Origin: Schizochytrium sp. TIO01
Taxonomy: Eukaryota > Protista > Bigyra: Labyrinthulomycetes
Assembly: GCA_004764695.1 (NCBI GenBank)
Contig: SMSO01000032.1
Span: 1,302,001 to 1,366,000 of the forward strand
Direction of reading: 5' to 3'
Length of the DNA: 64,000 nt
The position numbers and the translations under genes were made by a program. Below are positions 10,366-33,648 of the stretch, piece by piece (the first letter of the stretch is position 1; each line of letters opens with the position of its first letter). The notes beneath the pieces were generated by a model. The model was not told the DNA's origin, ran no database searches, and saw only the letters and a program-made list of their open reading frames with translations.

Positions 10366-11860
10366 ATGTTGGTCAAGGATGAAGATGACTGCCTCTGGCA
10401 GGACCGAGAGCTCCACTTTGACGCCCCAGATATGTAAGTCAGAGACACCTCGAATCAACCGGAGAAGTATGCTATCATGGATTGCTTTAGAATGGTTTCC
10501 AGAGCGCTTGTGAATTTTCAGTCTAACCTGTGTCAATTTGGTCTATCTGTATTTCCACAGAATTTTCAAGCCGAGGAAAGGAGAGACAGTAATTGATTCT
10601 ATCAACTCTGTTGAGGATACGAAAGGTAACAATGGCATGCGTGGTAGCTTGTACATTACAAATTTACGAATCGAATGGATTGCTCACAAAGGTTATCGCA
10701 CAAATTTAAGTACGTTGATATTGTCAACTATCTAGGTCGGTGAGCACGTTTACAGTCCCGATTTCGTATATTTCAAACTAATATTAGGTTCTCTCACTCA
10801 CTAACGTCTTACTCTCGTTTCGAAAATTGTCCTCACGTAATATTTTCAGGCATTGGGTTTAAGAATATTCTAAAGCTTCGTATCAAGAAAGCTCAATCTA
10901 AACTAAGAGGTGTGACACGTGCGCTCTTTGTAACATGCAAGCATGAGACGACCCGCTATGAGTTTATTTTCACTTCTCTCGTAAACACAAGCCCGCGTCT
11001 TTTTACCACAGTTCTTGCAGTTTTCAAGTAAGTTTATTCTATTTTCAAGAAACTTCTCATTAATGTCCAGGTTTCTGACAATGCAATTGATAAACTGTCT
11101 TCATCACAACAACTATTCAGAGCATACGAGTCTACAACTCTTTACCGTGAGCTCCGTTTACGTGGTGCTATTGTGAAAGATAAATCTCTTCGTCTTCTCC
11201 CTGGAGAGGAAGTCTATCAAACGCTTCCTGGTGTTTGGAATCTCTCGTCTGAGCAGGGAAGTCTTGGTACTTTTGTCGTGACCAATATTCGGATAGTTTG
11301 GTTTGCTGACCTTGCCAATAATTTTAACGTGAGCATTCCATACATACAAATTGTCAATGTTGCAATTAACAATTCACGCTTTGGAGATGCACTTGTTGTA
11401 GAAACAGCTCGCACAGGCGGAAAATATACCTTAGGGTTTTCGGATTGATCCAAAAGATAGGTTGACCCGCACGCTTGAAACGATCACAAACTTACATGCT
11501 ATTTTCTTCAAGTCTCCGGATTTTGGCGTCCGTGTATCTGTGGAAAGTGCACCAAAGCAAAGTCCATTTAATGCCATTGAAAAGGCAGCTGAGGAGGACC
11601 TCAGTATTGAAGAGAATGTGGATGATTTTATTCCGGCGTCCTTCTCTGCAGCCCCTCGTGGTCCTGAGGCGTACCTGGCTGGGGAGCCTGATGAGTCAAA
11701 TGACGAGTCAAAGGACCCAGAGTCCTCAAGCGATAGCGCTTCCTCAATCCCTGTGTACAATGCTCACCTTGGGCTTGCTGTACAACCACTTCTTTCGGGG
11801 GCAAGTGTGCAGTCCTTATGGAGCCTTGTTAGTGGTCCATCAACATCGAAAAAGGCCTAG
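10366..11860 (+). CDS. BBS5: Bardet-Biedl syndrome 5 protein (BBSome subunit); exons 10366-10433, 10561-10709, 10850-11027, 11121-11860, with one extra base at 11434-11440
   Basis: The spliced translation LWQDRELHFD...SVEDTKGNNG.RG.L.ITNLR...SKLRG...RYEFIFT...PRLFTTV...AYE...GVWNLSSEQGSLGTFVVTNIRIVW...FNVSIPYIQI...LGF(R)IDP...LGLAV...LW matches BBS5 throughout. Donors are GTAAGT/GTACGT/GTAAGT and acceptors are CAG. Confidence 0.93.
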
Positions 11861-16157: not shown

Positions 16158-16799
16158 TTAGACCTCGGAGCCATGGGGGGCATTGGAGTTCATGTGGCCA
16201 AAACGGTTGACATTGTGGGAGAAAGGGAGAGAGTACATGAAGGAAAAGAAGAGAAAGAAGAAGAATGCCGCACCAGCGCCGATGGTGCCACAGTAAGCCG
16301 ACGTACTTCCAACGTAGGCAATGGAATTCAGGTATGTGATATTTGTGGAGCACATGCGTGAATACACAGCAGTACTTGTAAATCCAGAAATGGTCACGTA
16401 CGAGATAACAATATCACCAATAAATCCGCCATGACCAAACACCTTCCCAGCCATTTCGTTGTTTTGCTTGAGGAGAAGAATTCCACTGACAGCCATAACG
16501 AAGGCGAAGATCAGAGTAAAGGCTGCAGCAGCAACAGGCCAGCCAAATTGGATGGACCACTTGCTAGCAACGAGGCCGATGACGAGACATGAGAGGCAGA
16601 ACTGGACGATGCGAACAATGACCAGGTGCTTCGCAAGGGCTTGAAAGTCGGCAGCATTCGTGACATGCAATTTGCTGAAGCCAGAATATTTGCCAAATGT
16701 GCTGCTACCAGAGGAGGCATGTGCACGAGGAGGGGGGGTGTTGTGCTCCTCAATAACCGGGACCGGTTCAGCCGGAACGGCGTGGTCTTCTCCACCCAT
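16158..16799 (-). CDS. Four-transmembrane MARVEL/CASP-like protein (paralog A)
   Basis: 213-aa ORF with four hydrophobic segments. TM1 has R-x-x-Q-F (VRIVQFCLS), TM3 has a conserved D (GDIVISYVTISGF) and TM4 has AGAAF, which fits a MARVEL pattern. Confidence 0.7.
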   Translation of the reverse strand: MGGEDHAVPAEPVPVIEEHNTPPPRAHASSGSSTFGKYSGFSKLHVTNAADFQALAKHLVIVRIVQFCLSCLVIGLVASKWSIQFGWPVAAAAFTLIFAFVMAVSGILLLKQNNEMAGKVFGHGGFIGDIVISYVTISGFTSTAVYSRMCSTNITYLNSIAYVGSTSAYCGTIGAGAAFFFFLFFSFMYSLPFSHNVNRFGHMNSNAPHGSEV

Positions 16800-17032
16800 G
16801 CTGGTTAAAGTTCTTCAAGCGTTTATAAGCAAAGATAATATCTGTAGTGTTATGCAACTGATTCTCGAGTTTGCGGAATTACAGGTTTGCTGTTATGTTG
16901 CTCCACCCCCCAAAAGCTCCTAGTGCAAGTAAGTACTTTTACTGATGGAGTTGTTTTGTATCGTATTTCAATACTATCTAGAAGAGAATTATATACATAA
17001 AGTTAAACTAAAATTTGACTATTCAAATTTAT

Positions 17033-17056
17033 AAAAAAAAAAAAAAAAAAAAAAAA
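17033..17056. repeat. poly(A) run
   Basis: About 24 consecutive A upstream of the MARVEL-A gene. Confidence 0.85.
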
Positions 17057-20000
17057 CACTGCCTAGGAAATAGCTCGTGAGAGTCTGATAAAATGTGTGC
17101 CAGGCCAAAGTTGCTGCAAATGAGCCCATAGCTCCACCCACATAGATAATGAGTATTTTAAGATGCATATAGGCGCGAGTATCTGTTTCTTTTGATTAAA
17201 TAAAATTAATAAAATTAATAAAAAAGAAGAAAAGACAGGAACCTGAATTGAGAATACGAAGGAGGGTGTGCGTCTCGCTAGCTAGCTATTGACAAAAATT
17301 GACTGACTGCCACTTTCATTCATTTACTATGCTTCCAAGAACCTCAAGTCCCTACACCAACTCAGCTGCTGAATGATTTCTTCTTCAAGTTCTCTTTCAT
17401 TAGGATGTACCTGCCTACCTGCCTGCACCTGTTGCGTGCGTTGCTTTGTCATTTTAGATACCTTGCCGACAGTGTTGTCTGTTCGAGCTGCCAAGATTAT
17501 TGCTTTGCACGTCATCCATATTTTAGCAACCATTCACTGAGTCAAACCAAATAAGTCGTTTCTACAGGGAGACCAACAAACATTCCTTCACTTACTGTTT
17601 TATTCATGCACTGCCAGGGACCGCATTTTGCATTTTGCATTTTGGCGCCTCTAGTGGTGGTCGTCAGCACAAGGCGTCCCCGTATTTCCCGCCTGCTGAC
17701 GTGCTGCGAGGTTATGTGGCGGATCAAACTGTGCTCTGTGTGTCCCTGGAGCAGCAGTAGTACAAGTTCAGATCGCAGGAACGGGGTGCCATTCTGCGCT
17801 CTTCAAGTTCTTATCAGCAGCATCCTTCGCAAAGTTCAACCAATCAACATCGAGGTGCTCAAAGTCGTTCGCTGCACGCCATCATCGAGCGCACAAAAAG
17901 CAGTGGTGGTTATGAATCGCCATGCCCAGACGCACGTAGGTGTGCCTTGGTGTCTTCTGTAGATGTTGCGAGCGATCGTCATTCCAAAACAATGCAGATG
18001 GAAAGAGACCCGAAGCCAGAAAAGTGATTGCGATTGCGATTGAGCGAGTGTGTTTTCCATGCGGCTTGTAGAACTGTAAAACCTTTCTTACACTAAAAGC
18101 TTTCTTTCTTTCTAATACGTGGCTACGCACCCACGCAAAGCAATCGCTGTCTTCTTGGAGCTCTGTCCGCTATTTATTTCCAAATCGCCTTCGTGCAGAC
18201 CATCGATTTGAGCTCTCGCGTCTTGCGTGCAAGCAGCTCCGGAGATTGGCTCAAGTGCCTCCGCAATTCCAGTTTTCGACAAGCCCTTAGACACCCCCAC
18301 TTCAGAGGATAAACTGGCGCCTCATTATTACATTTGAAAGCTCCTGAGCTGTCAAAGGTTCCCTCTTTGGTGCACACTCACAGTGGAGAGCGACCATCGC
18401 TATCGACAGCTATCGATAACAGCGCTCTGAAGAGCTTGGCTCCGCGGTTCAGAGCGTCAGGCACATTACTCGAGAAGCTCGAACGCAGAAACTGTAGCAT
18501 CGAAGGTGGCAGGTAGCTAGCTACGTATTGCGTCAAACGCGCTCTTAAACTTTGGTTTGAGACTGAAAGAAAACCACTCTTTGCAGCAAATGGGTGAAGA
18601 ATGAATATTAGGCCTAATCGTTGAAAAGTTTACCTCTAGAGGTAGGTAGCACGAAAAGAGCCTTGCAGGTGAGTGAGTAAGTAGCCACGTCTTGAGACCG
18701 TATGGATGGATGGATGTATTGGTTTCCAAATCTCTCGAGCCCGAAGGTCTCCATGAGGCTTGGAGGTGATATGGCCGACCGTAGGGCCATGATTCGGACT
18801 CCAAAGTGGACCATTGCGGCCGCCTTCCAGTGTGCATAATACGTTTTTTTCTTGTCATCGTTATCGTCTCGCACTTTTTTTTCTTCTCTGTTAAATTAAG
18901 AATTAAAAAATAAAATCGAAAAAATAATCAAAGAAACATTGTGACATTTATTGATTTATTCATTAAAATTATGAAGCCGCTGCTCCTGTTGAGTCTGTTG
19001 AATGAATATGTGCATCGTAGAAGCACGCCAAGAGCATCGAAATCTGTTGTTGCGCTTTTGCTCGCTTATTGTTGTTTGCTTTACTGCTTGCTTGCTTGAT
19101 TGCTTGCTTGCTTGCTTGATTGTTCAGTCTGAGGGTGAAAGCGCCTCCTGCAAGAATTACCACCCGCTTCTTTGCAGGAAATGAAGTTAAAAGAACGGTG
19201 TGTTGAATGCATCGATCTTAGATTTTAATTTCGTTCGCGATTGAAGTTTGATCCAAGTACCTTGGATCCCTCAATGACAAAACTCAGACCTCCAGCTTGA
19301 GGCAGCATTTTGGTGCCGTGGCGACCATATACAGGTCCCTGGCTTCAGCATCATGGCTTCTTCCCAGCTTGTGAACGAGGTTGTGGTGAGATCTTCATTT
19401 ATTAAATCGCAGTGGAAGAACCATCACGGTTTATAGGTTTTAATATGTGGCTGTTGATCAAAATATCAGAACGCAATGAGGTTATCAGGTAGTCGAAGTG
19501 AATCATTGAGCGAGGGAGATGGCACGAGCCAGTTTGGGCGCAGAGGTGCTGTTAGATGGATGGCCTTGGACGACGAAGCTTAGTGAGCTTAAGTCTCGAC
19601 GACTATCATGTTGCCAAGCAGCACGTGCAAACTGGAAGATGGAAACTCTTAGTGAAATCGAGACGTCAAAAGCAGGTGAGCACGACAGGAGAGAACGTTT
19701 GCAGCGGAGGATGAATATCACTCGATTGAAGTTGTCACTGCAATCATGATCGAGCTGGATAGCAGCGTGATACAACCAATATGACCAACAACCCTAATAC
19801 ATCGCTGATGATCTTCTGGCTTAGGGTGGGCGTCATAATTTAGTATCGCCTTGACGATTCGCAGAGAAAATATGATATTCGCCATCGATATTGCTGCTCA
19901 TGAGTGATTGTTTTGGCTTGAGTTTATGCCCAAGCTGCTAACTTGAGTCCTCTTGATCTTACTTACATACCATAGTAGGTAGGCCATGCTTTCGGTATCG

Positions 20001-21916
20001 TAATTGTAGCCATCATAAATAGTACGTAGCACTTCTTATTTTGATTTAATTTATTACTATTATTCTAAGTATGTGATAATAGTAGGTACTAGGATACTAG
20101 TTTTTGTTTTCGTGTGTTTTGGGTTTTCTAAGAAGATTGAATTTGAGACCTAATGGCTCAAATCCAGGATGAAGACGGAGAAGGGTCCCTATTGTATGAT
20201 TTAGGCAGCCTGTCATTGGTTCGCTTTCACTTCTACAAAATAATTTAGTTTTCAAGTTATCAAACCGTGCTGCTTGCTAACTGGAGTAGGTCTGCAAAGT
20301 TACAAACAATATAATTCACTCCAGGCAATGTCCCATAGGGATGATGACGGCCACAATGTGAGCTGCTCGATGAAAAGGCTTACTTGGAGAGTAATCTCAT
20401 GACGGTTGTTGACGGTTATGGCGGCATTTTGGAACACTGGTCTCTGGTCAGCTCTTCTGAGATGAAATATTGAAATCAATGTTCCGTAACATTAACAAGT
20501 TGGGACGTTACTTCAGCGTGGGGTCGAACAACTTGAGCGCTGCATGGACCTTTCAAAGCAACGAGAAGGCTCTCAAGTGACCTACTGCTTCTATTTGACA
20601 ACAAAGGCATATGTTTTGCGTGTAAAAAATACTCTGCCTTGCCAACGCACTCTGGCTACATGTGGCAAACGGCTTTCCGCTTCCTGACTAAGTGTTCAAT
20701 AGAACTTTTTCTCAGCCACACTTGGCGATGATATGTGGTCTTTGGCTCCTACTACTGTCAACAAACCAACTTAAGTGGAGTCCTATGTTATGCTCTGTAA
20801 TATAGTAATAGTAACAAGAACATGCATAACTTCCCTCGTCGATAAATTACAACTTTGGATATCTTGTCAGCAATTTCTGAAAATTGACTAAAACAACGCC
20901 GCGCAATATGATCTAACCTCTCGCCTTCGTCTATTATTGATGAGTTTGATGGTTTGCTGTGTTAAGGTCAAATTCTCCTGGGCTGGTTCGTGGCGTGCTC
21001 TAGGGACGCTGTCATTGTCCGCCTACCAGTGAATAATGTCCCACCTTCGACAGATTGTTCTGTGGACAGCACAATCTGGGTTTCTTGGAATGACCTATGC
21101 TATAGTATAGAATATCAGACGGAAAGTAGAAACTCTCCCCCTTTGCTTGATCAGGACTTGGGATGTTTTAAAACATGTCTCAACGTCATCGAACAAATTA
21201 AGCTAGTCTCAATGGGAACCTCCAAAGTCCTTTCAATACTGCAATGATTAATTACTTTATCCTATATTAGAGGTCGATGTACCGGCTTAAGCAGAAGCCA
21301 ATTGAATTTACCCATTGCGCACGAATTTCCAGCTCGAGTGTTCACAACTATCACATTGTACAAATAGCGACTTCAAATAATCAAGGCTTCACCGAGTCAC
21401 TATTCATTTTGTGTTAAAGTATTTCATCTATAATATGACCTTGTATCTTCTATGATGAGTAACCACTAACACTGAACTAGATTAATAAGATGTCGTGTTG
21501 AGAGTTGACTGCTTTATGCTGGTGATAAAATCGTTCAATATTTTGAACATGATACAGATGATACAGGTGCATTGTTCTAGACACCAAGTAGGGCTGAGAC
21601 TGCCATCTCATCAATGTGAAAGAGGAAAAGTTAAAGATTTATTGCTTCTAAGACTAGGCAAGAATATTCCTTGGTTTTAATTGACATTTTCAGTCGAACT
21701 TAGAGTTCGTAAATGAATTAAATCAAAATCGAACTCAGGACCTCATCATCGAATTGCCAGATGTCAGGGCGTTAGAGCGAGTATGAAATTTCAATTAATT
21801 TTAAGCTAATCTCATAGAACAAAGATGATGATATTAGGAAGTAAGTTTATTGTTCCCTGAAACGATAGCCAAAAATTGCGCACGCAAAAGAACAGATGAA
21901 GTAGGAAAAACAGGTT

Positions 21917-24007
21917 TTACATCATTGAGCCCTTGATGATGAGACTGGTTCTTCGGCGAGGCGCAAGCTCATCATCTTCAAGCTCATCTCGAGTGGTGCT
22001 CTGGCCTGTTCCTGAATGTCCGTCAGCCTTGCTTTCGGCTGTAGCGTTGGGCACAAACGGAAGGGGCATTGACTGGTAGTTCAGTCCTTGACGGCTATCT
22101 AGGGGCTGAGGAGCACTGGCCTGTTCTTGGGGGGACATTGTATCCAGACTCTGCTCGGGAGCATAGTCAGAGCTCGAAAATTGCGAGTGCTGCTGATGTT
22201 GTTGCTGCTTAAGACGAGCAACTTGTTCTTCCTCGGCCTTAAGCTGCCGGCGAAGGTTGTCGTTCATTGACTCAAACGAGCTCTTTCGTCGCATAGAGAT
22301 CCTCCCTCCTGCTGGACTGCTGCCAGATCTAACTCCCGGGGCTGCACTGTCAGCTTGAACAGAGCGCTTAGTTGCGGCAGAGGAGGTGGTTGCCGGAGTT
22401 TGGGTGGATGGGCTTACGGGGCTTAAAGGGCTTACAGGTGAGTTTGCATAGTCGACAACACCCCCTGACGCAGGTTTGTCGTTATAACTCGGCCCTTCTA
22501 CAAAGCGACCAGCTGACTTTGAGCTGGGCTCGCCCTGAGGCTGGCTTTCAAGGTCATTCTTATAGTCAATGAAGCTGCTCATACCTTCAGCCTCGCCATC
22601 CTGGATAGGGGCCATGTGGATTCCTTGCACGTGTTGGTGAAGCCTGCGTTCCATGTCTGCGGAGTCATCGATTCCGCGCCAATGGCTTGACGCCTCACGC
22701 CAATGAGTTATTACATCATAAAGGTGACCTTCGTCGAGAATGTGGCGAATGAAACCATCCGAAAGATTGCGCTCAACTTCTTCACGCTCGACCAGAGGTC
22801 CATAGCTCGTGTCATCGAAACAGTAGCCCAAGAGAGGAAGGTAGAAGGGTTTCCGGCGGAACTGCATACGGAATTTCTGAGTATCGACACGATTTTCAAA
22901 CGCAATGGTGAGATTAAGAATGATTGCATCATAATGTGTAAGTGGGTCGCGACGTACAATCTTACTTGCGGTTTCGAGGTCAAAAGCAATCTCGCCCTCA
23001 ATCCCAGCATCGCGGAGGATGAACATAAAGAGTCGTTGAATCTCGATGCGAGGCTCAACAATGAGTACGCGGGGAGCACGAGGGCCAGCTTTGGTACGCT
23101 TGGAATTCGTTTTGCGGTTGAGGAAAGATACATTGCGCATTTTATGCGGGGCCATTGCATCAGAGCCGCGTTGGTATGGGGTAACCGCGCGAGCACTGCG
23201 AATACGCTTCACAAAAGGCTCAAGAACAACAAACCTTACATACCAAGCGAAGAAACCGAACAAGTTCTTAGCGAACAAGTCACCAACTGAGTGTCCAATC
23301 TTATCACCGTCCGGGCCCATCAAATTAAAGCACGGCGGTCCAAAGGCATAAAGAAAGATAAATAGACTCTGTGCAAAGAAAAAGTAGGTCATGACGGCAA
23401 GAACCCACTCCCAGCAGCGTTCGTGAACGATGAAATGCTTCTTTTTTTCGCGAATCATTGCCAAAAGATCAACGACAAGCCAGAAGCACACGAAATAGGA
23501 TGCAAGGTTGAAGATCCATTTAAGTGTCACGTTCTTCTGCATGGCTGCCAACACACCAAAAGCAATCATCACGATATCTTTTACCATCATAAAGGTGACA
23601 TGACCAAGCTCTAGGTCGTCAGGGGTCATAAGATTCAGTAGAATGTTAACGTTCGAGATAATCACAGGACAGGTCATCATCCAGAACAAGTAACGGCCGA
23701 TAGCTAGATCAAAAACGTCACCAGCGTGGTTTTCAATGGGAATGTAAAGGAAATCAGTTGTTCCAAAGCAAGCGAGTGAGTAAACACAAAAGGTCACAAA
23801 TTGCACATAGATAGGATGCAAATTACAGCGTCCATTGCGATACTGGAAACCATAAAAACAAATCAGTGCAGTACTGCAGGAAAACACGCATAGACTTGCG
23901 CCTGCGACTCCTTGCGACACAGTTTCATCTGTTGTTGGCTGGGTTTGTAGTACACGAATAAACTCGCGACGCCAAAGCTCATGTTCACTCATAGCCATCG
24001 CCTCCAT
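21917..24007 (-). CDS. ACR1: Anion channelrhodopsin, red-shifted RubyACR type (AlACR1-like), with a C-terminal pseudo-receiver domain; 696 aa from the ATG at 24007
   Basis: Seven TM helices. TM3 is GRYLFWMMTCP (channelrhodopsin RY..W..TCP, with Phe at the BR D85 position) and TM4 carries D144. TM7 is GHSVGDLFAKNLFG with the retinal Lys247 at 23267-23269. Pocket residues are F108/Y171/Q213/I217. A CheY-like fold begins at RVLIVEP. Confidence 0.92.
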   Translation of the reverse strand: MEAMAMSEHELWRREFIRVLQTQPTTDETVSQGVAGASLCVFSCSTALICFYGFQYRNGRCNLHPIYVQFVTFCVYSLACFGTTDFLYIPIENHAGDVFDLAIGRYLFWMMTCPVIISNVNILLNLMTPDDLELGHVTFMMVKDIVMIAFGVLAAMQKNVTLKWIFNLASYFVCFWLVVDLLAMIREKKKHFIVHERCWEWVLAVMTYFFFAQSLFIFLYAFGPPCFNLMGPDGDKIGHSVGDLFAKNLFGFFAWYVRFVVLEPFVKRIRSARAVTPYQRGSDAMAPHKMRNVSFLNRKTNSKRTKAGPRAPRVLIVEPRIEIQRLFMFILRDAGIEGEIAFDLETASKIVRRDPLTHYDAIILNLTIAFENRVDTQKFRMQFRRKPFYLPLLGYCFDDTSYGPLVEREEVERNLSDGFIRHILDEGHLYDVITHWREASSHWRGIDDSADMERRLHQHVQGIHMAPIQDGEAEGMSSFIDYKNDLESQPQGEPSSKSAGRFVEGPSYNDKPASGGVVDYANSPVSPLSPVSPSTQTPATTSSAATKRSVQADSAAPGVRSGSSPAGGRISMRRKSSFESMNDNLRRQLKAEEEQVARLKQQQHQQHSQFSSSDYAPEQSLDTMSPQEQASAPQPLDSRQGLNYQSMPLPFVPNATAESKADGHSGTGQSTTRDELEDDELAPRRRTSLIIKGSMM

Positions 24008-24881
24008 CTTGGCAGAATGTGCTGGCTTTTGAAATTGTGAACTTGCCCAAGCGAAAGGCAAACTTATCAACTATACCTCAGGCCTCTCGAATTCGAATTC
24101 GAAGCAAGTATGCGTCTGTCCCAGCCCAGGCTCCAGCGTCAGCGTCAAGGTTGTTTGTTTGTGTGCGTATGCCTTACACAACCGGTACCTGACGTGCCTA
24201 AGCAACTCAAGCACCCAAGGTCTGGTGACCTGCTCGAAAGACGTAAAGGGTTTTGCCAGATTTTGCCAAACCCACTCGTCAGGAAAAAAAAAGTTTACGT
24301 TCTACAATTTCATAGATTTAGAACCAAAGAGAGCTCAGTGAGGTCAATGTGCAACACAAAAGCAAGAAAAACATTATTCTTATTTTAAATAAAATTTTAA
24401 TATTACAAAGAAAATGAAAGGGATAACAAGCAGATTTAGCAAGATTTAAAAACATGCCAAGTTTGTTTCCCGCAGAGCAATTCTCTTTATGCTACCCTTT
24501 TGCTACCAATATCATTTTTGTTAGAGCACCAAAATTCAACTCCGAAAGAGCCGTCAAATATTCTTACCAGTTAACTGTACAGTCAGGGCTTCCACCGGAT
24601 CGTTTAACGGACACTGGTGAGGGGCACTGTGTATTTTAATTAATCTCCTTGAGGCAGAAATGAAAATGAATAAATAAAACATGTCGTGATTAAAGAAGTA
24701 GAGTTCGTTACTTGAGCAGATTCGTAAGATCAGAGCGACTCAACTGACTGAGCCTCTTCTGGTATTAGTGCTGAGCCTGTGTGACGCATTAAATAATTAT
24801 AAATTCAAATTCCAAATACGATGGCTAAGTTGTTGTGTTACAAGAGTCTGAAACAATCATCTGACAGAAACTGGAAAAATA

Positions 24882-24912
<31 letters not shown>

Positions 24913-26588
24913 ATTCAATGGCTCTTATTACTTCCTAGAAATTACTGAGAAACGCTGCTTCAAGTTGCGTTATCTCAGAAAATAAACAAAACAGAAAGTA
25001 AGAAATTGCAATGAAGTTGCGAGACAAGCTAGAACATGACCCAGGCGGGAGACATTTTGAGGAACTTGTTTACCCGGCTCAACAATAAGGGTGTTTATCT
25101 AATTTGAGACAGATTGTACCTGCTGCGTCATCTACACAAGCATGGATAATCTGGAAAATCAACGATAACATATTTCTGCCTGCGCGTCAGAGTTGCCAAA
25201 TCGTGTGCGTGCGTGCATGCATGCATGCCTGCAGAACGAGGCCCTTTGGTTTATATATGTAAAGGTGCAAAATGCTTGTTTTTGAAAATGTTAAAAAACA
25301 TAGAATGTGCCACTTCGACATAAAAGTTGTGGTCAGGCGATTCATAAATCTCCGCAGGAATCACAGTGAACATCAATCCGTTTGAAGAACTGCAGCTGAG
25401 GCGCAAACTCGAGAGGTGCTATATGCCAACCCTACTCAGTAGATGATGCAGCGTGGCCATGTTAGAATATTGCCTTGTTGTATATCCAGAATTTTAAACT
25501 TGCTAAATCAATTCGGAAGCTGCCTCTTCATTTATCAATTCCATTGATCATTAAAAAGTGATAAACTCTTTAAATCCGGCCAGGTGTACAAGGTTCTACC
25601 ATGTCCATTTTGGCTCCTTTCTTTGTTATAGTTGCTTTGTGCTTCATTTATAAAAGAATAAAAATAATTATAAAAACATAACCGTTTCCCTGGAATACTT
25701 TTTATTTTACAAGCCTGGACCGAAAGAAGCTCGTTTTGCTTGACTTGGTGTCATTGAGGGGGGAAATAATATTGATTCAGAGTAGGAACAGGTTCAAAGT
25801 TTTACTGGTGCGGTGACTGTAACGCAGATACTGCGACACAGTTGTGTCATTTTGAGTATCAAAAATCCCAACGGACATGTCTGTTCATCGAATGCGTAGT
25901 ACGCAACCTGAAGGCACTTCCACAGAGGAGGTAAGAAATGTCTCACTTAACTCATGCAGGCTACTCAAGGTCATAACAACCCCACTTGGTTTGTGAAGAG
26001 GCTGGCTGGAATATGCACTACGCTGTGTAGAAAAACATGAACGGATATGATCCGTTCCAGATTCTCTGTTACCAACAATTGCATCGAATGCATGTATCCG
26101 CTTACGCGCTGTGAAAAACCATAAGGCTTTGTTAATATTCAAAGAGGGAAAATGTATTGAGTGATCAGATGGTTAGATAAGATGAACGTTTCATAAGTTG
26201 GAGGAAACTAACAACTTGGCGAGAAGGGTACATTTCCAATTTGCGAATTTAAACTTAAACGAACATCATTTAATCAAGGAAGCAACTCTTGAAAGGGATC
26301 GGCGGCAAATCTGTTTTTGGCAGTCAGCCTTTGCTTGCTTTGGCTATCAGTCTTGGGCCTTGGTAAGGCAATTGCAGAAGTCTTGGCCTCGAGCATCAAG
26401 CAATAGCTCAGCCCGGCAGTCCACCCGCACTCTTGCAACGTGGACAGACCTCTGTCTTACACAACCTTTTACAGATTGGTAGACGTGTATAGCAAGACCT
26501 TTTCGTTGTTATCAAATTAATAGATAATCGAAGGCGATTCTGATTGCTGTTGAGGAAGGAAAAGAGAATCGTTGAAGCATACTTTAAA
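24008..26588. promoter_or_regulatory. Divergent (probably bidirectional) promoter region between the two channelrhodopsin genes
   Basis: 2.58 kb between two head-to-head ATGs with no credible ORF. The regulatory role is inferred from gene geometry only. Confidence 0.5.
24881..24914. repeat. (AAAT)n microsatellite in the ACR intergenic region
   Basis: About 8 copies. Confidence 0.9.
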
Positions 26589-28496
26589 ATGTCTTCTCTC
26601 GTACTTGGGGCAGGCCAGTGGTTTTCAGAAAGCCTCTCAACACTTAAGCCACGCTTGCTTTCTGTAGATGACGAACTTCCTTCTGGCGTCTTTGGCGCCC
26701 GTTTATGCGTCTTTGTTTGTTCAGCTTTTTTAATTCTCTTTTACTCATTTCAGTTCCAGGCGAAGCGTTGCAACCTCTCTCCAATTTTTGTGCAGCTCGT
26801 CACCGTGACCTACTACTGCATTAGTACATTTGGATCTACTAGTTACCTGGTTCTAAATGTAGAAGACCCGGACAACTCTACCCATTTTCAATTCATGCTG
26901 GGAAGGTACATTTTCTGGATGTTAACTTGTCCTATGATCATCTCCAACCTTTGTGTGCTTTTGAATATCCTGACTCCAGACATGCTTGATTTGGGTCATA
27001 TAACTTTGCTCATGGTCAAGGATATTTTTCTCATGTGCTTTGGAATTCTTGGTGCTGCACAGAGTACGATGGGTATCAAGGCTGCTTTTGTTAGTGCTTC
27101 ATTCCTGTTTGCGGCGTGGCTTGCATACGATATTATCAATCTTGCTATTGCTCGCCGTAAGTACTTTATGGCTCATCAGTACTGCTGGAATTGGATGATC
27201 GTTGTGATCGTTCTATTTATGGTATCATGGACAGTCTTTCCTGTTCTTTTTGTCGTCGGTCCTCCGCTGCTGGACATTTCGAGCTCGGGAGCTGACCAGA
27301 TCGGACATGCTGTAGGAGATTTATTTGCCAAGAACTGCTTCGGCTTTGTAGTTTGGTACGTACGTTTTGTCGTTCTTGAGCCATACACCACACGCAATGC
27401 GATGCATCGTTCCGTTTCTCCCTATGCCTCGAACCTTTCCTCCAAGCAAATCAAACTTGGAGAAATTTCCGACGAGGCCCTGCGAACAAAACGTATCCGT
27501 CGCCACATTGGTCGTCGTAGCCCAGCAGTGCTTATTGTGGAGCCTCGTATCGAGATGCAGCGCCTTTTCAGCCTTATGCTTAACCAGGCAGGAATCATTA
27601 CTGAATTTGCGTTTGACATCAACATGGCTGTTCATATGCTCAAGCGTGATCACCTTGGTACTTATCATGTTGTATTTGTGAACCTTTCAGTGCCTACTGA
27701 AAAGCGCGTTGAAATTCAGCGATTCCGTTCTCACTACCACCGCAAGCCATACTACCTACCAGTACTCGGTTTCACCTTTGAGGAGGATCACATGGTTGAA
27801 GTTCTTGAACGCGAAGAACGTCAGCGCACGATCTGCGACGGTGTAATCCGCCACATTCTTGATGAGAACCACATTTATGAACTTGTAGTTCATTGGAAGG
27901 AGGCTGCAGCTCATTGGCGCGATATTGACATGTCTGCTGACATTGAGCGTAAGCTTTATGAAAACGTACAAGGCATTCATCGTTCGCCAACTGTCCACTC
28001 TGACGATCACAGTGAAGGGTCTTTCCAGGTTGATGACAATCATGACGAAAGTCCGCGGTATCAACAGTCTGGTGTAATGCCCTACGGTGGCTTCGGTCCA
28101 GAAGATGAGTTTGCCTACGGCAATGGGAGCCCCTCCATGACAATGCAGCAACAACCTGGAGCTTTGCCGGGCCAGATATCTGATTTCCCTTCCACGCCTC
28201 GTTCACGAGGACCTGGGTTTCCTGATGATTCGTCAGCTAGGCCCTCGGGTTATCAGCGCTCCCAAAGTTTTACAAGCGGAGATTTTGGTGCTGAGTATGA
28301 CATGTATCCCCGTCAAGACCGCGCTCACATGATGCGTAGGTCCGACTCAGCTCAATCTGGACAGTACAGTCCCCAACAGCAGTTGCAACGCTCCAACTCA
28401 ATGAACAGCTACTCTGCACAGTCTTATAATGATAATGCAGGTATGGGTGCTGGCCCTATGCAAAATGGTGCAATGTTCCGTAACAAATTCTTGTAA
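26589..28496 (+). CDS. ACR2: Anion channelrhodopsin paralog (AlACR2-like) with a C-terminal pseudo-receiver domain; 635 aa from the ATG at 26589
   Basis: Colinear with the 21917-24007 protein: GRYIFWMLTCP, MVKD, helix 6 SWTVFP and TM7 GHAVGDLFAKNCFG (retinal Lys248 at 27330-27332). These are followed by the AVLIVEPRIEMQRLF receiver-like domain and a low-complexity tail. Confidence 0.92.
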   Translation: MSSLVLGAGQWFSESLSTLKPRLLSVDDELPSGVFGARLCVFVCSAFLILFYSFQFQAKRCNLSPIFVQLVTVTYYCISTFGSTSYLVLNVEDPDNSTHFQFMLGRYIFWMLTCPMIISNLCVLLNILTPDMLDLGHITLLMVKDIFLMCFGILGAAQSTMGIKAAFVSASFLFAAWLAYDIINLAIARRKYFMAHQYCWNWMIVVIVLFMVSWTVFPVLFVVGPPLLDISSSGADQIGHAVGDLFAKNCFGFVVWYVRFVVLEPYTTRNAMHRSVSPYASNLSSKQIKLGEISDEALRTKRIRRHIGRRSPAVLIVEPRIEMQRLFSLMLNQAGIITEFAFDINMAVHMLKRDHLGTYHVVFVNLSVPTEKRVEIQRFRSHYHRKPYYLPVLGFTFEEDHMVEVLEREERQRTICDGVIRHILDENHIYELVVHWKEAAAHWRDIDMSADIERKLYENVQGIHRSPTVHSDDHSEGSFQVDDNHDESPRYQQSGVMPYGGFGPEDEFAYGNGSPSMTMQQQPGALPGQISDFPSTPRSRGPGFPDDSSARPSGYQRSQSFTSGDFGAEYDMYPRQDRAHMMRRSDSAQSGQYSPQQQLQRSNSMNSYSAQSYNDNAGMGAGPMQNGAMFRNKFL

Positions 28497-29624
28497 GGAA
28501 CCAGCTTAAGGAATGCTTTTAAAGAAAAAGGCTATCTAAAAATGTACTTCTTGTTTTATTCCTCTCTTACGTTGCTTAGTTGTTGCGTGAAACACCGCGA
28601 GCTCCCCGGTGCTTGAATTGTACTAGCGCTTCTGGCGAGTAAACTTAAACCGAATTGCATTATCATTGGATTTTTATTTTTTTAATGACGAATGCAGCAA
28701 CGTTCTTCTCGTTGATAGATGTGGCAATCTAGTCCTTATTTTCATGCCCAACGTACGATTACGTTTTCCATTTCTGTATAAAATTTCCTGTTTCTCATTC
28801 ATGTTGTTGCTTAATGAGATGTACACCCTTCTGCCTTTTCTCTGGGGTTTCTCGTTCCATCGCTATTATTTTCGAAACAGAGCGAACAGTAAAAAGCGAA
28901 GAACCCCCAAGACAACCACTTTACTATGTAACCGCAGATTCAGAATTCCCAGAAAACTGTCATCCTACGCAGCAGCACAGCTGATTGTTGGGACTATGCC
29001 AATCTTATTTGCCTTACGAAACTTTCTCCTGAGTAAGCCCGAAATCAAGTATTGTCAACCATTGCCATGAGCTTTATTTCAATAAGAACCACAAGCTTAA
29101 GGTTGCGCCACAACATCTGATTACTATATTTTACATTTGAAAAGGAGCAAAATAAAAGCAAAAATAAAAACAAAAAGGAGAAGTAGCACTATTTAGATTT
29201 TATATATAGGCCTGCTTTATAATTCTATTTGAAAAATTGAAACTCCCCAGAAAAACAGAAACAGATAGTAGTAAGTAGGTAGGTAGGTACTACCTAATAC
29301 ACCAGTTTTAATTGAGTAACCAAAACTTAAGAAGATAACCAACTAGACCCGTGCCGAACAAATGGTAACAGGCCTCAACAACAGCCCCATAGTCAATTTA
29401 AATTTAACCTCTGCGGTACGAGAGCCAATTTTTGGCTTTCTTGTTCCCAACTCAGAAAACAGGTATTGTTTCCCCCGAAATATTCTCTACTCGCACTGCT
29501 CTAGAAATGCTAAAAGTTTTACCTATCAACAGCCTCCCAAAACGACGAGGAAACACTAGAATTTATCAAACTCCAAACATATTACTCAGCAGCCCCTTCT
29601 TCGCAAGCGCTGCCAGGGCGCTTC

Positions 29625-30536
29625 ATGTCGGTCAGCACTGGCCGCGACTCTGGCGTAGGCCTTCCGCGCTCCGCCGTTGCCACTCTTGCAGGTGGCTACA
29701 TCTTCGTCTTAGGTGTAGCTGCTGGCCAACTGGCTGGATTCGCAGCAGGATTGAGCTGCGCCGTGCCGCTGGCTAGCTCTGTCGCAGGCGCCACCGTGGT
29801 GTCTTGTGCCGCTGTAGCATCATGTTCAGTAGCTCTCAATATCTCCGGATCGTCCTCGTCTTCCTCGCAGGCTGTCTCCTCGGCGAGCCCTGCCGCTGAT
29901 TCTTTTGTTTGTGACGGTAGTTCTGGTTTCCACGAACGTCGCATTTCGGCGCTCTTGAGTTTAGAAGATGTCGCTTCGGCGGTATCTTGCACGGCCGGCA
30001 AGTACTTTGACGCCTCTGGTCCATCCGTTGAGCAGCTATGGTGGGCTTCGGCAGCGCTGGCAGTCTACCGTTTACTCGGGGGGCGATTTGCGGCGGTCAT
30101 GCCAAGCGACCTCCTCAAGCCCGGCGCCTTTGCTCGTGAGAGCCTTCCTGCAGGTCGCCGTTACGCAAACACTGCACAGCGACAAGAAGTCGTTCGCATC
30201 GGTCGCTCCCGAGGTTGCCATTCTTGCGGCAGTCGCCGCCCAGGTGCGAGCGGATTCCATGCGGATCACATGCCACCTTCTAAGCTACGAGCTGTTCGCG
30301 AGGCAAAGCTGCCACTGCGTATCTTCAACATGCAGGTGCCACAGGTTTTCCTGCCGCAGTGTGCACAGTGCTCTGCCCTCCAGGCCTTTGCGGCAAGACA
30401 ATGGAACTCGATGTCACTGCGTAGACATGCTGCACTGCGACTTCACATCGCTGCGCTACGCCCGTATCACCTCACTGGAATTGTGGTTTGTGCAGGGGTC
30501 CTTGCAGGAGTCCCCACGAATGCACGCACACACTGA
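29625..30536 (+). CDS. Membrane-associated protein with an HNH/His-Me-finger-like zinc-binding domain
   Basis: 303-aa ORF with good coding character. It has Ala/Gly-rich hydrophobic N-terminal segments, then GCHSCG-x(9)-HADHMPP-...-PQCAQCS..Q, and a hydrophobic C-terminus. Confidence 0.65.
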   Translation: MSVSTGRDSGVGLPRSAVATLAGGYIFVLGVAAGQLAGFAAGLSCAVPLASSVAGATVVSCAAVASCSVALNISGSSSSSSQAVSSASPAADSFVCDGSSGFHERRISALLSLEDVASAVSCTAGKYFDASGPSVEQLWWASAALAVYRLLGGRFAAVMPSDLLKPGAFARESLPAGRRYANTAQRQEVVRIGRSRGCHSCGSRRPGASGFHADHMPPSKLRAVREAKLPLRIFNMQVPQVFLPQCAQCSALQAFAARQWNSMSLRRHAALRLHIAALRPYHLTGIVVCAGVLAGVPTNARTH

Positions 30537-32520: not shown

Positions 32521-33648
32521 ATGGCCTCTATGAACGAGAACTCAGTCAGAGAAAGCAAGCTCGCCAACGAATATGAGGAAACTCATAGTGATGATGGCAA
32601 CAGCACGATCACCGGCGAAGATGCCACACACTATGGTGACTCACAAGCGCAGGATGATGTCCCTTCGCTGCATGATGATGCCACCAACGAGAATAACGGG
32701 GACGATATAAAGGTCGACATGAAAACCTACAGAAGTCATAATGAGCAACCGAGCTCAGCAGATAGCCATTATGAAAATGCTCCTCAATCACGAAAGAACA
32801 AAAGCTGGGATCACTCAAATAGTCATCGCCCTGAGTCGGTAGAGTCTCACAACCATGACCATCACAAAAACTCCACTTTCAACTACCGTGAAGGCCTTGA
32901 GGAGCTGAAACCTGACTTTAACAAGGTAAGGGAGGCAGCACCTGGAGTTGCTGAAGCACTTGGTGTCAACTTCCGTGCTAACTCGGTGGGAGCCGTGAAG
33001 AAGGCGCTCAACTTCTTGATCTATACACGTGTTCTCCAGTTCATCTTTTCTATTTTAGCTTGGGCAACTCTGGCAGCTGCCATTCAAGACTTCAAGACAA
33101 CTCTCGACGATATCGGCCAGGGAAGTATTGATTCAACACCATTTCTATCTGGTGTTATCTACGCGCTCGTGCTTATGGCTTTACTCACTGTCTTTTCAAT
33201 TCTCACGGGCCTCGCTGGGTTTCTCCTTCTCGGAGGCAACTACAACACAGAGACCCATGTGAAAGTCTTTGCTCGCTTCATGGCAGCAATGGACCTGATG
33301 TTTGTGTTTCTGACCTTTTCTGCCTTTTCATCTTGTGCAACCTCTACCATGGTCATTTCTGGTTTTGCTGATATGAACGGGGTGGAATTTGGCTCCGGCA
33401 AAGCAGCAGCGGGGGCTTCTTTTACTATTATCTCCTGGCTTACGTTGTGCTACTCCGCTGCTTTGGCGACGACAGTAAACTTGGGTCGTAACTATCTTTT
33501 GCGACCTACAGACTTTGAGCGCCCCAATGCCCGGACTATGAGCAGCTCTCAATCAAGCGATGCAAACCGCAGTAGCCATAACTTTCACGAAACCCAGAAA
33601 TACGCCCGCAATGACTTGAATGATAACACTACTGTAGCTGAGGTTTAA
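32521..33648 (+). CDS. Four-transmembrane MARVEL/CASP-like protein (paralog B) with a long acidic N-terminal tail
   Basis: 375-aa ORF containing TRVLQFIFS, GFLLL..N...KVF, MDLMFVFLTFSAFSSCA and AGASF. It aligns motif by motif with the 16158-16799 protein. Confidence 0.75.
   Translation: MASMNENSVRESKLANEYEETHSDDGNSTITGEDATHYGDSQAQDDVPSLHDDATNENNGDDIKVDMKTYRSHNEQPSSADSHYENAPQSRKNKSWDHSNSHRPESVESHNHDHHKNSTFNYREGLEELKPDFNKVREAAPGVAEALGVNFRANSVGAVKKALNFLIYTRVLQFIFSILAWATLAAAIQDFKTTLDDIGQGSIDSTPFLSGVIYALVLMALLTVFSILTGLAGFLLLGGNYNTETHVKVFARFMAAMDLMFVFLTFSAFSSCATSTMVISGFADMNGVEFGSGKAAAGASFTIISWLTLCYSAALATTVNLGRNYLLRPTDFERPNARTMSSSQSSDANRSSHNFHETQKYARNDLNDNTTVAEV

What the first reader, a model, noticed from the sequence alone, without database searches (positions are those of the whole stretch)
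21917..28496. Head-to-head pair of light-gated anion channel (channelrhodopsin) genes in a probably non-photosynthetic protist
Seen: two colinear 7-TM proteins with a retinal Lys (DLFAKN), the RY.FW..TCP helix 3 and a TM4 Asp (C113/D144, the channelrhodopsin DC pair). They are transcribed divergently, 2.6 kb apart. Established: a non-carboxylate at the BR D85 position marks anion channelrhodopsins, and labyrinthulid ACRs are a described family, so the proteins themselves are probably known. Inference: the shared upstream region would co-express two spectrally different channels, giving a two-colour photosensory unit, probably in flagellated zoospores (BBS5 points to a flagellated stage). The physiological role is not evident from sequence.
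Basis: partly seen in the sequence, partly recalled or inferred. Interest (0 to 1): 0.85.

Follow-up and report, generated by a model that had tools for sequence, protein, structure and literature searches.

The report
Known AlACR1/AlACR2 channelrhodopsin gene pair
The two divergent genes are the already published and electrophysiologically tested anion channelrhodopsins AlACR1 (red) and AlACR2 (green) of the thraustochytrid Aurantiochytrium limacinum, so only their back-to-back layout, which is also adjacent in Hondaea, is a small addition.

Summary
Two intronless, colinear channelrhodopsin genes lie head-to-head, with 2,581 bp between their ATGs.

They are not new. From the first ATG they encode 696 and 635 residues, the lengths published for AlACR1 and AlACR2 of Aurantiochytrium limacinum. 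Gene A carries every published AlACR1 marker (F108, T112, Y171, Q213, I217). Govorunova et al. 2020 reported action maxima of 590 nm (AlACR1) and about 520-545 nm (AlACR2). Anion selectivity was shown for the labyrinthulid family. AlACR2 gave only a residual Cl- conductance. That paper had already proposed three-colour sensing and zoospore phototaxis. A 2025 proteome paper found the ACRs higher in zoospores.

- The Hondaea orthologues are consecutive genes, so the duplication and the adjacency predate the split of the two genera.
- Transcript-like contigs show two separate mRNAs whose 5' ends lie about 1.9 kb apart.
- Many RNA-like assemblies hold only about a third of the stretch. In the two I laid, that third was AlACR1. 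This argues against obligate co-expression from a shared promoter.
- The conserved cytoplasmic domain folds as a receiver-like domain without the acceptor Asp.

The parts
21917..24007 (-). AlACR1 coding sequence (696 codons plus stop), a RubyACR-type red-absorbing anion channelrhodopsin
   Evidence: Length 696 aa and residues F108, T112, Y171, Q213 and I217 match the published AlACR1. It is 694/696 identical to an MMETSP0960 transcript protein. Pfam Bac_rhodopsin E 7e-22.
23153..23911 (-). AlACR1 seven-helix rhodopsin domain (about residues 33-285), with C113, D144, D243 and K247
   Evidence: Alignments to C1C2, ChR2 and iC++; invariant columns in alignment A1.
22742..23071 (-). AlACR1 receiver-like (pseudo-REC) cytoplasmic domain, about residues 313-422, followed by a long helix
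   Evidence: AlphaFold2 model with mean pLDDT 81 and a (beta-alpha)5 topology. The top Foldseek hits are all receiver domains (PhoP, PhoB, NtrX, CheY4; target-normalised TM about 0.7). The acceptor-Asp position is N365 (read).
26589..28496 (+). AlACR2 coding sequence (635 codons plus stop), the green-absorbing paralogue with the canonical Trp/Pro retinal pocket
   Evidence: Length 635 aa as published. It is 634/635 identical to a Logan protein. Pfam Bac_rhodopsin E 1e-21. K248, C114 and F109 are present.
27528..27857 (+). AlACR2 receiver-like domain
   Evidence: Weak Pfam Response_reg match (E 0.016 on the excised piece). It is colinear with the AlACR1 domain.
24008..24414 (-). AlACR1 5' untranslated region (up to about 407 nt) with two short upstream ATGs
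   Evidence: Transcript-like contigs of four runs end at 24313, 24373, 24409 and 24414. Upstream ATG count.
26327..26588 (+). AlACR2 5' untranslated region (at least 262 nt)
   Evidence: The contig of run X3 starts at 26327. A low-depth contig of X1 reaches 25764.
24415..26326 (.). AT-rich spacer (1,912 bp, 39% GC) without transcript-like cover in three of four runs. It presumably holds both promoters and contains an (ATAA)n microsatellite at about 24880-24915.
   Evidence: Depth is 0 in runs X3, X7 and X12. No Rfam match. No ORF above 94 aa. No upstream words shared beyond chance.
21339..21916 (-). AlACR1 3' untranslated region (40 to about 578 nt, depending on the contig)
   Evidence: Record lengths and offsets of the contigs, table 8.

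Best explanation
The stretch holds the genes for AlACR1 and AlACR2, two of the three published anion channelrhodopsins of Aurantiochytrium limacinum or a nearly identical strain. Each protein has a seven-helix retinal-binding domain. In both, the Schiff-base counterion position is a Phe and helix 2 has no glutamates. A phospho-acceptor-less receiver-like domain and a disordered tail follow. AlACR1 is a RubyACR (590 nm) that passes Cl- when lit. AlACR2 absorbs green light and on its own gives mainly an intramolecular charge movement with little Cl- current. The genes are an old inverted duplicate pair. The duplication predates the Aurantiochytrium/Hondaea split, and the two copies have stayed neighbours since. 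They are made as two separate intronless mRNAs from 5' ends about 1.9 kb apart, most likely from separate promoters. Shown in the literature: spectra, Cl- selectivity, and higher protein abundance in zoospores. Inferred: that they serve zoospore photo-orientation.
For: Identity. The ATG-to-stop lengths of 696 and 635 aa equal those published for AlACR1 and AlACR2. F108, T112, Y171, Q213 and I217 are all at the published positions. Gene A is 694/696 identical to an MMETSP0960 transcript. The genome holds exactly three paralogues, as published.

Family features. The BR-D85 position is non-carboxylate, the D212 equivalent is kept, and helix 2 has no Glu.

Function, from papers. The labyrinthulid ACRs tested were strictly anion-selective, with spectra at 485, 520 and 590 nm. 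AlACR2 showed residual conductance only. AlACR1 dropped significantly after zoospore settlement, and AlACR2 and AlACR3 also fell.

History. The tree groups (AlACR1, Hf_007872) at 96/94 and (AlACR2, Hf_007882) at 99/99. The Hondaea proteins GBG24568.1 and GBG24569.1 are consecutive on one 535-kb contig. The only DNA-level trace of the duplication is a 100-nt, 73% complementary inverted repeat inside the coding sequences.

Transcripts. The contigs are separate, show no joints, and leave a 1.9-kb gap.
Against: I could not align the window proteins to the GenBank AlACR entries directly, because those sequences are not held by any tool. Identity therefore rests on lengths, marker residues and a 99.7% match to an MMETSP transcript, which differs at 2 residues, so the strain may differ. 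The runs laid are only guessed to be RNA, and contigs cannot measure expression. Run X3 shows both genes at similar word depth (71.5 and 64.2), so co-expression under some conditions is real. Gene orientation in Hondaea is unknown.
Confidence: 0.9

Rival explanations
1. The spacer is one bidirectional regulatory region that obligately co-expresses a red and a green channel as a two-colour photosensory unit in zoospores.
For: The genes are divergent, and their adjacency has been retained since before the Aurantiochytrium/Hondaea split. In run X3 both transcripts are assembled at similar word depth. All three ACR proteins fall after zoospore settlement.
Against: The 5' ends lie 1.35-1.9 kb apart, which is wide for a bidirectional promoter. 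Runs X7 and X12 assemble AlACR1 (depth 172 and 11) but only a 196-nt scrap of AlACR2, or none. Twelve of 18 RNA-like runs hold only about a third of the stretch, although a genome-size assembly labelled with the same organism as 10 of them holds 85%. The gene-oriented upstream halves share no words beyond chance. The third colour, AlACR3, lies on another contig, so colour vision here does not need linkage. The AlACR2 change was not significant in the proteome.
Confidence: 0.2
2. AlACR1 and AlACR2 form a heteromeric photoreceptor. AlACR2, nearly non-conducting alone, would act as a green-sensing modulatory subunit of the red channel, and linkage would help keep the two matched.
For: AlACR2 alone gives mostly a fast charge movement and only residual Cl- current. 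The paralogues share 45% identity in the rhodopsin domain and a conserved receiver-like domain that could mediate association. Adjacency is conserved.
Against: No test was done here. AlACR1 works well alone in HEK cells. Expression looks uncoupled in several RNA-like assemblies. Weak AlACR2 currents may simply reflect poor behaviour in a heterologous cell.
Confidence: 0.08

Closest known systems
AlACR1 / RubyACRs (Govorunova et al. 2020, PNAS 117:22833; preprint 10.1101/2020.04.15.043158)
   Same: Gene A has the same length (696 aa) and the same retinal-pocket residues (F108, T112, Y171, Q213, I217). It also shares the missing helix-2 glutamates and the weak REC-like signal in the cytoplasmic part.
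   Different: Nothing at the protein level, apart from 2 residues in the disordered tail relative to an MMETSP transcript. The papers I read do not mention the genomic layout.
AlACR2 (same paper)
   Same: Gene B has the same length (635 aa). It has the canonical Trp/Pro pocket, as expected for the green-absorbing paralogue.
   Different: None found. It also carries Phe at the BR-D85 position (F109) although it is not red-shifted.
HfACR1 and its neighbour in Hondaea fermentalgiana (GBG24568.1 / GBG24569.1)
   Same: They are orthologous one-to-one (64% identity each; tree) and are consecutive genes on one contig.
   Different: Orientation and spacer length in Hondaea could not be read here.
Cryptophyte ACRs (GtACR1/2) and chlorophyte ChR1/ChR2
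   Same: All are light-gated channels of the channelrhodopsin superfamily. The position equivalent to the ChR2 Cys128/Asp156 pair is kept. Like GtACRs, the counterion position is non-carboxylate. As with Chlamydomonas ChR1/ChR2, several spectrally distinct paralogues occur in one flagellate.
   Different: By sequence they are nearer to chlorophyte cation ChRs (C1C2, E 1e-17) than to GtACR1, which did not appear among the solved-structure hits at E<0.01. All helix-2 glutamates are absent. A receiver-like domain is attached.

Membership tests
Labyrinthulea anion channelrhodopsins (both genes) | Microbial-rhodopsin seven-helix domain with the Schiff-base Lys in helix 7 | tested here: met
   Pfam PF01036 E 7e-22 and 1e-21. 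K247 and K248 lie in DLFAKN and align with the ChR2 Schiff-base Lys motif.
Labyrinthulea anion channelrhodopsins (both genes) | Non-carboxylate residue at the BR Asp85 position, with the Asp212 equivalent conserved | tested here: met
   F108 and F109 lie in RY[LI]FW against RYAEW of C1C2. D243 is invariant. The paper states the same for the family.
Labyrinthulea anion channelrhodopsins (both genes) | No glutamates in helix 2 | tested here: met
   The helix-2 segments aligned to the E82-E101 region of C1C2 contain no Glu in either protein.
Labyrinthulea anion channelrhodopsins (both genes) | Groups with labyrinthulid ACRs by sequence and carries a cytoplasmic part of about 350 aa with a REC-like domain | tested here: met
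   The nearest proteins are the two Hondaea ACR homologues, at 64% identity each. The REC-like fold is modelled. That domain occurs in only 17 representative clusters out of 1.84 billion; 9 of the 10 newly found ones I scanned have a rhodopsin domain N-terminal to it.
Labyrinthulea anion channelrhodopsins (both genes) | Light-gated, strictly anion-selective conductance | not testable with these tools
   Reported by patch clamp for the family and for AlACR1. For AlACR2 only a residual Cl- conductance was found.
RubyACR subgroup | Pocket residues Phe108, Tyr171, Gln213, Ile217 (AlACR1 numbering) | tested here: met
   Gene A has all four at exactly these positions, and its Hondaea orthologue keeps them.
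RubyACR subgroup | The same pocket in gene B | tested here: not met
   Gene B has Phe at the 171 equivalent, and Trp and Pro at the 213 and 217 equivalents. It is therefore a labyrinthulid ACR but not a RubyACR, consistent with its published green maximum.
Two-component receiver domain (cytoplasmic domain) | (beta-alpha)5 CheY-like fold | tested here: met
   Model pLDDT 81. There are 137 Foldseek hits at E<=0.001, and the top of the list is almost all receiver domains.
Two-component receiver domain (cytoplasmic domain) | Phospho-acceptor Asp at the end of strand 3 and an acidic pair after strand 1 | tested here: not met
   The end of strand 3 is N365 in AlACR1, Asn in AlACR2, Ser in AlACR3, and Asp only in P0003. 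After strand 1 the residues are Glu-Pro. The Pfam Response_reg match is far below its cut-off (12-16 bits against 30.2). It works like a pseudo-receiver, not a phosphorylatable one.

The most novel reading that the evidence does not exclude
The adjacency of a red RubyACR and a green, poorly conducting paralogue has been conserved since before the Aurantiochytrium/Hondaea split. This could reflect a functional two-subunit photoreceptor, either a heteromer or a strictly matched pair, in which AlACR2 needs AlACR1, perhaps through the shared pseudo-receiver domains. That would be analogous to the heterodimeric rhodopsin cyclases of chytrid zoospores.
Probability: 0.08. Interest if true: 0.55.

Novelty: already known. 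Interest (0 to 1): 0.15.

Why it matters
[quoted passage not shown] That is established work from 2020 onwards, so re-finding their genes adds nothing to it. The small additions are a divergent layout with adjacency conserved in a second genus, separate transcripts, and support for a rhodopsin-specific pseudo-receiver fold. These may help anyone who wants to dissect native regulation or knock out the pair in thraustochytrid zoospores. None of them opens a new question by itself.

Tried and rejected
1. The look-up of encoding contigs on the Hondaea orthologue, to read orientation and neighbours.

2. Two scans of metagenome contigs. The scan with P0003 confirmed nothing. The scan with alignment A1 gave only two distant (27%) rhodopsin loci, L010 and L011, which are not labyrinthulid and say nothing about synteny.

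3. Extended synteny through the flanking MARVEL-like protein. Only a 92% identical Logan protein was found and no Hondaea homologue, so gene order beyond the ACR pair could not be compared.

4. Shared promoter motifs. Gene-oriented upstream halves of AlACR1, AlACR2 and AlACR3 share no 9-mers, and the 7- and 8-mers in slight excess are mostly AT-rich. The AlACR1/AlACR2 pair shares one 11-mer against 0.58 expected.

5. An 11-mer visible in both 5' UTRs lies in the same genomic orientation in both, which means opposite orientation relative to the two genes. About one such match is expected by chance, by my own estimate. Rejected.

6. Rfam scan of 21000-29500: no match.

7. The 'mirror cassette' MARVEL<-ACR ACR->MARVEL noted earlier in the scan is only weakly supported. 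Both ORFs are below the Pfam MARVEL cut-off and their pairwise E is 8e-4. An own-genome search with one does not find the other. A 303-aa ORF intervenes on one side only. No comparable ORF lies downstream of AlACR3.

8. Complex prediction for an AlACR1/AlACR2 heteromer was not sent. I do not claim binding, and paralogous channelrhodopsins would be expected to score as dimers anyway.

9. The MMETSP header's TAXON_ID 87120 resolves to a fungus, while A. limacinum is 87102. I treat the header number as unreliable and do not use it.
Full report
**What is there**

Two long open frames face away from each other: 21917-24070 on the minus strand and 26544-28496 on the plus strand. The ORF lister starts both at a TTG. 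The first ATGs are at 24007 and 26589, and the two proteins begin to align exactly there. From those ATGs the products are 696 and 635 residues, and the start codons are 2,581 bp apart.

Both match Pfam Bac_rhodopsin well above its cut-off (78 bits against 24.6). Their best solved relatives are channelrhodopsins: C1C2, iC++, ChR2, Chrimson and KnChR, at E 1e-13 to 1e-18. They are colinear over 637 residues at 39% identity.

- the Schiff-base Lys in DLFAKN (K247 in gene A, K248 in gene B);
- RY[LI]FW..TCP in helix 3;
- C113 and D144, invariant in eight homologues.

**Which proteins they are**

The 2020 RubyACR paper (preprint 10.1101/2020.04.15.043158, later PNAS) describes three channelrhodopsins of Aurantiochytrium limacinum. 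It gives the full lengths of AlACR1 and AlACR2 as 696 and 635 residues. It names the AlACR1 pocket residues Phe108 (the BR Asp85 position), Thr112, Tyr171, Gln213 and Ile217.

Gene A has exactly these residues at exactly these numbers. It is also 694/696 identical to a protein of an MMETSP transcriptome. Gene B has the canonical Trp/Pro pocket.

The window's genome (64 Mb, 37 contigs) holds exactly three paralogues. The third is on contig 13 (583 aa, L003) and fits AlACR3.

The family features stated in the paper are met in both genes: a non-carboxylate at the D85 position, a conserved D212 equivalent, and no glutamate in helix 2. I could not align to the GenBank entries themselves, so the strain may differ slightly. 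The identification is otherwise secure.

**What is already known about them**

- The seven labyrinthulid ACRs tested gave photocurrents, and under all tested conditions the reversal potential followed the Cl- Nernst potential. The three A. limacinum spectra peak at 485, 520 (about 540-545 for the rhodopsin itself) and 590 nm.
- AlACR2 is unusual. In HEK cells its signal is dominated by a fast, voltage-independent charge movement, and only a slow residual Cl- conductance was resolved. Calling both genes 'light-gated anion channels' therefore needs that caveat.
- The authors already proposed colour-sensitive sensing and zoospore phototaxis.
- A 2025 proteome study (PMC12221091) found AlACR1 significantly lower at all vegetative time points than in zoospores. 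Its main text says AlACR2 and AlACR3 also fell but not significantly. One of its supplementary tables marks AlACR3 'yes' and AlACR2 'ns'.

**The layout**

This is the only part that I did not find in the papers I searched.

The Hondaea fermentalgiana homologues FCC1311_007872 (GBG24568.1) and FCC1311_007882 (GBG24569.1) are consecutive genes on one 535-kb contig. In a maximum-likelihood tree of the rhodopsin domains they pair one-to-one with AlACR1 (96/94) and AlACR2 (99/99). Both orthologue pairs are 64% identical. The duplication and the adjacency therefore predate the split of the two genera.

At DNA level only a 100-nt, 73% complementary inverted repeat inside the coding regions remains, so the duplication is old. 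Two JGI proteins (P0003 and P0007) both report a longest contig of 136,917 bp and may be a third such pair, but this is unverified.

**Is the spacer a shared promoter?**

I laid the Logan contigs of four RNA-like runs from four studies on 22300-28299, which is 6,000 letters.

- No joints were seen, so both genes are intronless here.
- AlACR1 contigs end at 24313, 24373, 24409 and 24414, giving a 5' UTR of about 300-410 nt.
- The AlACR2 contig of run X3 starts at 26327. A low-depth contig of X1 reaches 25764.
- Positions 24415-25763 are uncovered in all four runs, and 24415-26326 in three of them.
- In X3 the two transcripts have similar word depth (71.5 and 64.2).
- In X7 AlACR1 has depth 172 while AlACR2 is a single 196-nt contig at depth 2.9. 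In X12 AlACR2 is absent.

Twelve of the 18 RNA-like runs hold only 0.28-0.34 of the sampled words, about one gene's worth. A genome-size assembly (X19) labelled with the same organism as 10 of those 12 runs holds 0.85.

Caveats: the 'RNA' label is a guess, contigs cannot rank expression, and X1 contains a 49-kb record, so it may include DNA. Even so, the picture is of two separate mRNAs with start regions about 1.9 kb apart and an expression that is not obligately coupled. Gene-oriented upstream halves share no words beyond chance, and Rfam finds nothing. I put the shared-promoter reading at about 0.2.

**The cytoplasmic part**

The conserved segment after the rhodopsin domain (AlACR1 residues 305-470) was modelled with a seven-sequence alignment. 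The model has mean pLDDT 81 and a strand-helix pattern repeated five times, followed by a long helix. Foldseek returns receiver domains almost exclusively at the top of the list: PhoP, PhoB, NtrX, GacS D1 and CheY4, with target-normalised TM about 0.7.

The acceptor-Asp position at the end of strand 3 is Asn in AlACR1 and AlACR2, in both Hondaea proteins, and in P0006 and P0007. It is Ser in AlACR3 and Asp only in P0003. The acidic pair after strand 1 is Glu-Pro. This supports the weak REC signal that the 2020 paper mentioned and points to a non-phosphorylatable pseudo-receiver.

A full HMMER pass over 1.84 billion representative proteins finds this domain in only 17 clusters, almost always starting around residue 250-320. 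Of ten newly found representatives scanned, nine have a rhodopsin domain in front of it. Three of the ten end in a MYND zinc finger: two of those nine, plus P0011, in which Pfam found no rhodopsin domain and the receiver-like stretch starts at residue 67. What the domain does (localisation, partner binding or dimerisation) is inference only.

**Surroundings**

- The ACR pair is flanked, 5.1 kb and 4.0 kb away, by two four-helix ORFs. Both score below the Pfam MARVEL cut-off and resemble each other only faintly.
- One side has an extra 303-aa ORF between the ACR gene and that flanking ORF. AlACR3 has no such neighbour.
- The 'mirror cassette' noted earlier in the scan is therefore weak.

**Verdict**

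These are the already named and characterised AlACR1 and AlACR2, so the finding is already known. The co-expression inference is not supported by what could be checked.

Noticed in passing
window 22742-23071 (-) and 27528-27857 (+); P0011-P0022: The pseudo-receiver domain of the ACRs occurs in only 17 representative clusters out of 1.84 billion proteins. Nine of the 10 newly found representatives I scanned carry a rhodopsin domain in front of it. Three of the 10 (P0011, P0013, P0017) end in a MYND zinc finger, an architecture (rhodopsin, REC-like, MYND) that I did not see described in the papers read.
   Followed up: partly
window 16158-16799 (-) and 32521-33648 (+): Two four-helix ORFs flank the ACR pair, each pointing outward. 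Both are sub-threshold Pfam MARVEL matches (29.3 and 21.8 bits against 32.8) and resemble each other only faintly (E 8e-4). No counterpart lies near AlACR3, and no Hondaea homologue was found.
   Followed up: partly
window 16800-21916: The 5.1 kb between the MARVEL-like ORF and the AlACR1 stop has no ORF above 118 aa. It is either non-coding or an intron-rich gene that ORF listing misses.
   Followed up: no
window ~10565-11824 (+): A BBS5 gene (PF07289, best exon 177 bits) split into at least four matched pieces, so this genome does have introns although both ACR genes lack them.
   Followed up: partly
P0006 (CAK9108303.1): A labyrinthulid-type ACR with the receiver-like domain (49% identical to the AlACR2 rhodopsin domain) is deposited as a protein of the dinoflagellate Durusdinium trenchii, on a 12.4-kb contig. 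It is probably a thraustochytrid contaminant of that assembly, or less likely a gene transfer.
   Followed up: no
window 26589-28496 (+), residue 109: AlACR2 also has Phe at the counterion (BR D85) position although it absorbs green light, so Phe there is not sufficient for the Ruby red shift.
   Followed up: no
window 24880-24915: An (ATAA)n microsatellite sits in the middle of the spacer. The reads tool skipped 24872-24923 as a repeat.
   Followed up: no
window 29625-30536 (+): A 303-aa Ala/Ser-rich ORF in a locally GC-richer stretch (52%), with no Pfam match, between AlACR2 and the second MARVEL-like ORF.
   Followed up: no
L010, L011 (marine metagenome contigs Ga0115000_10001435, Ga0114997_10002147): Two distant rhodopsin relatives (27% identity over residues 104-255 of AlACR1) on 16-21 kb contigs. 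Their family was not determined.
   Followed up: no
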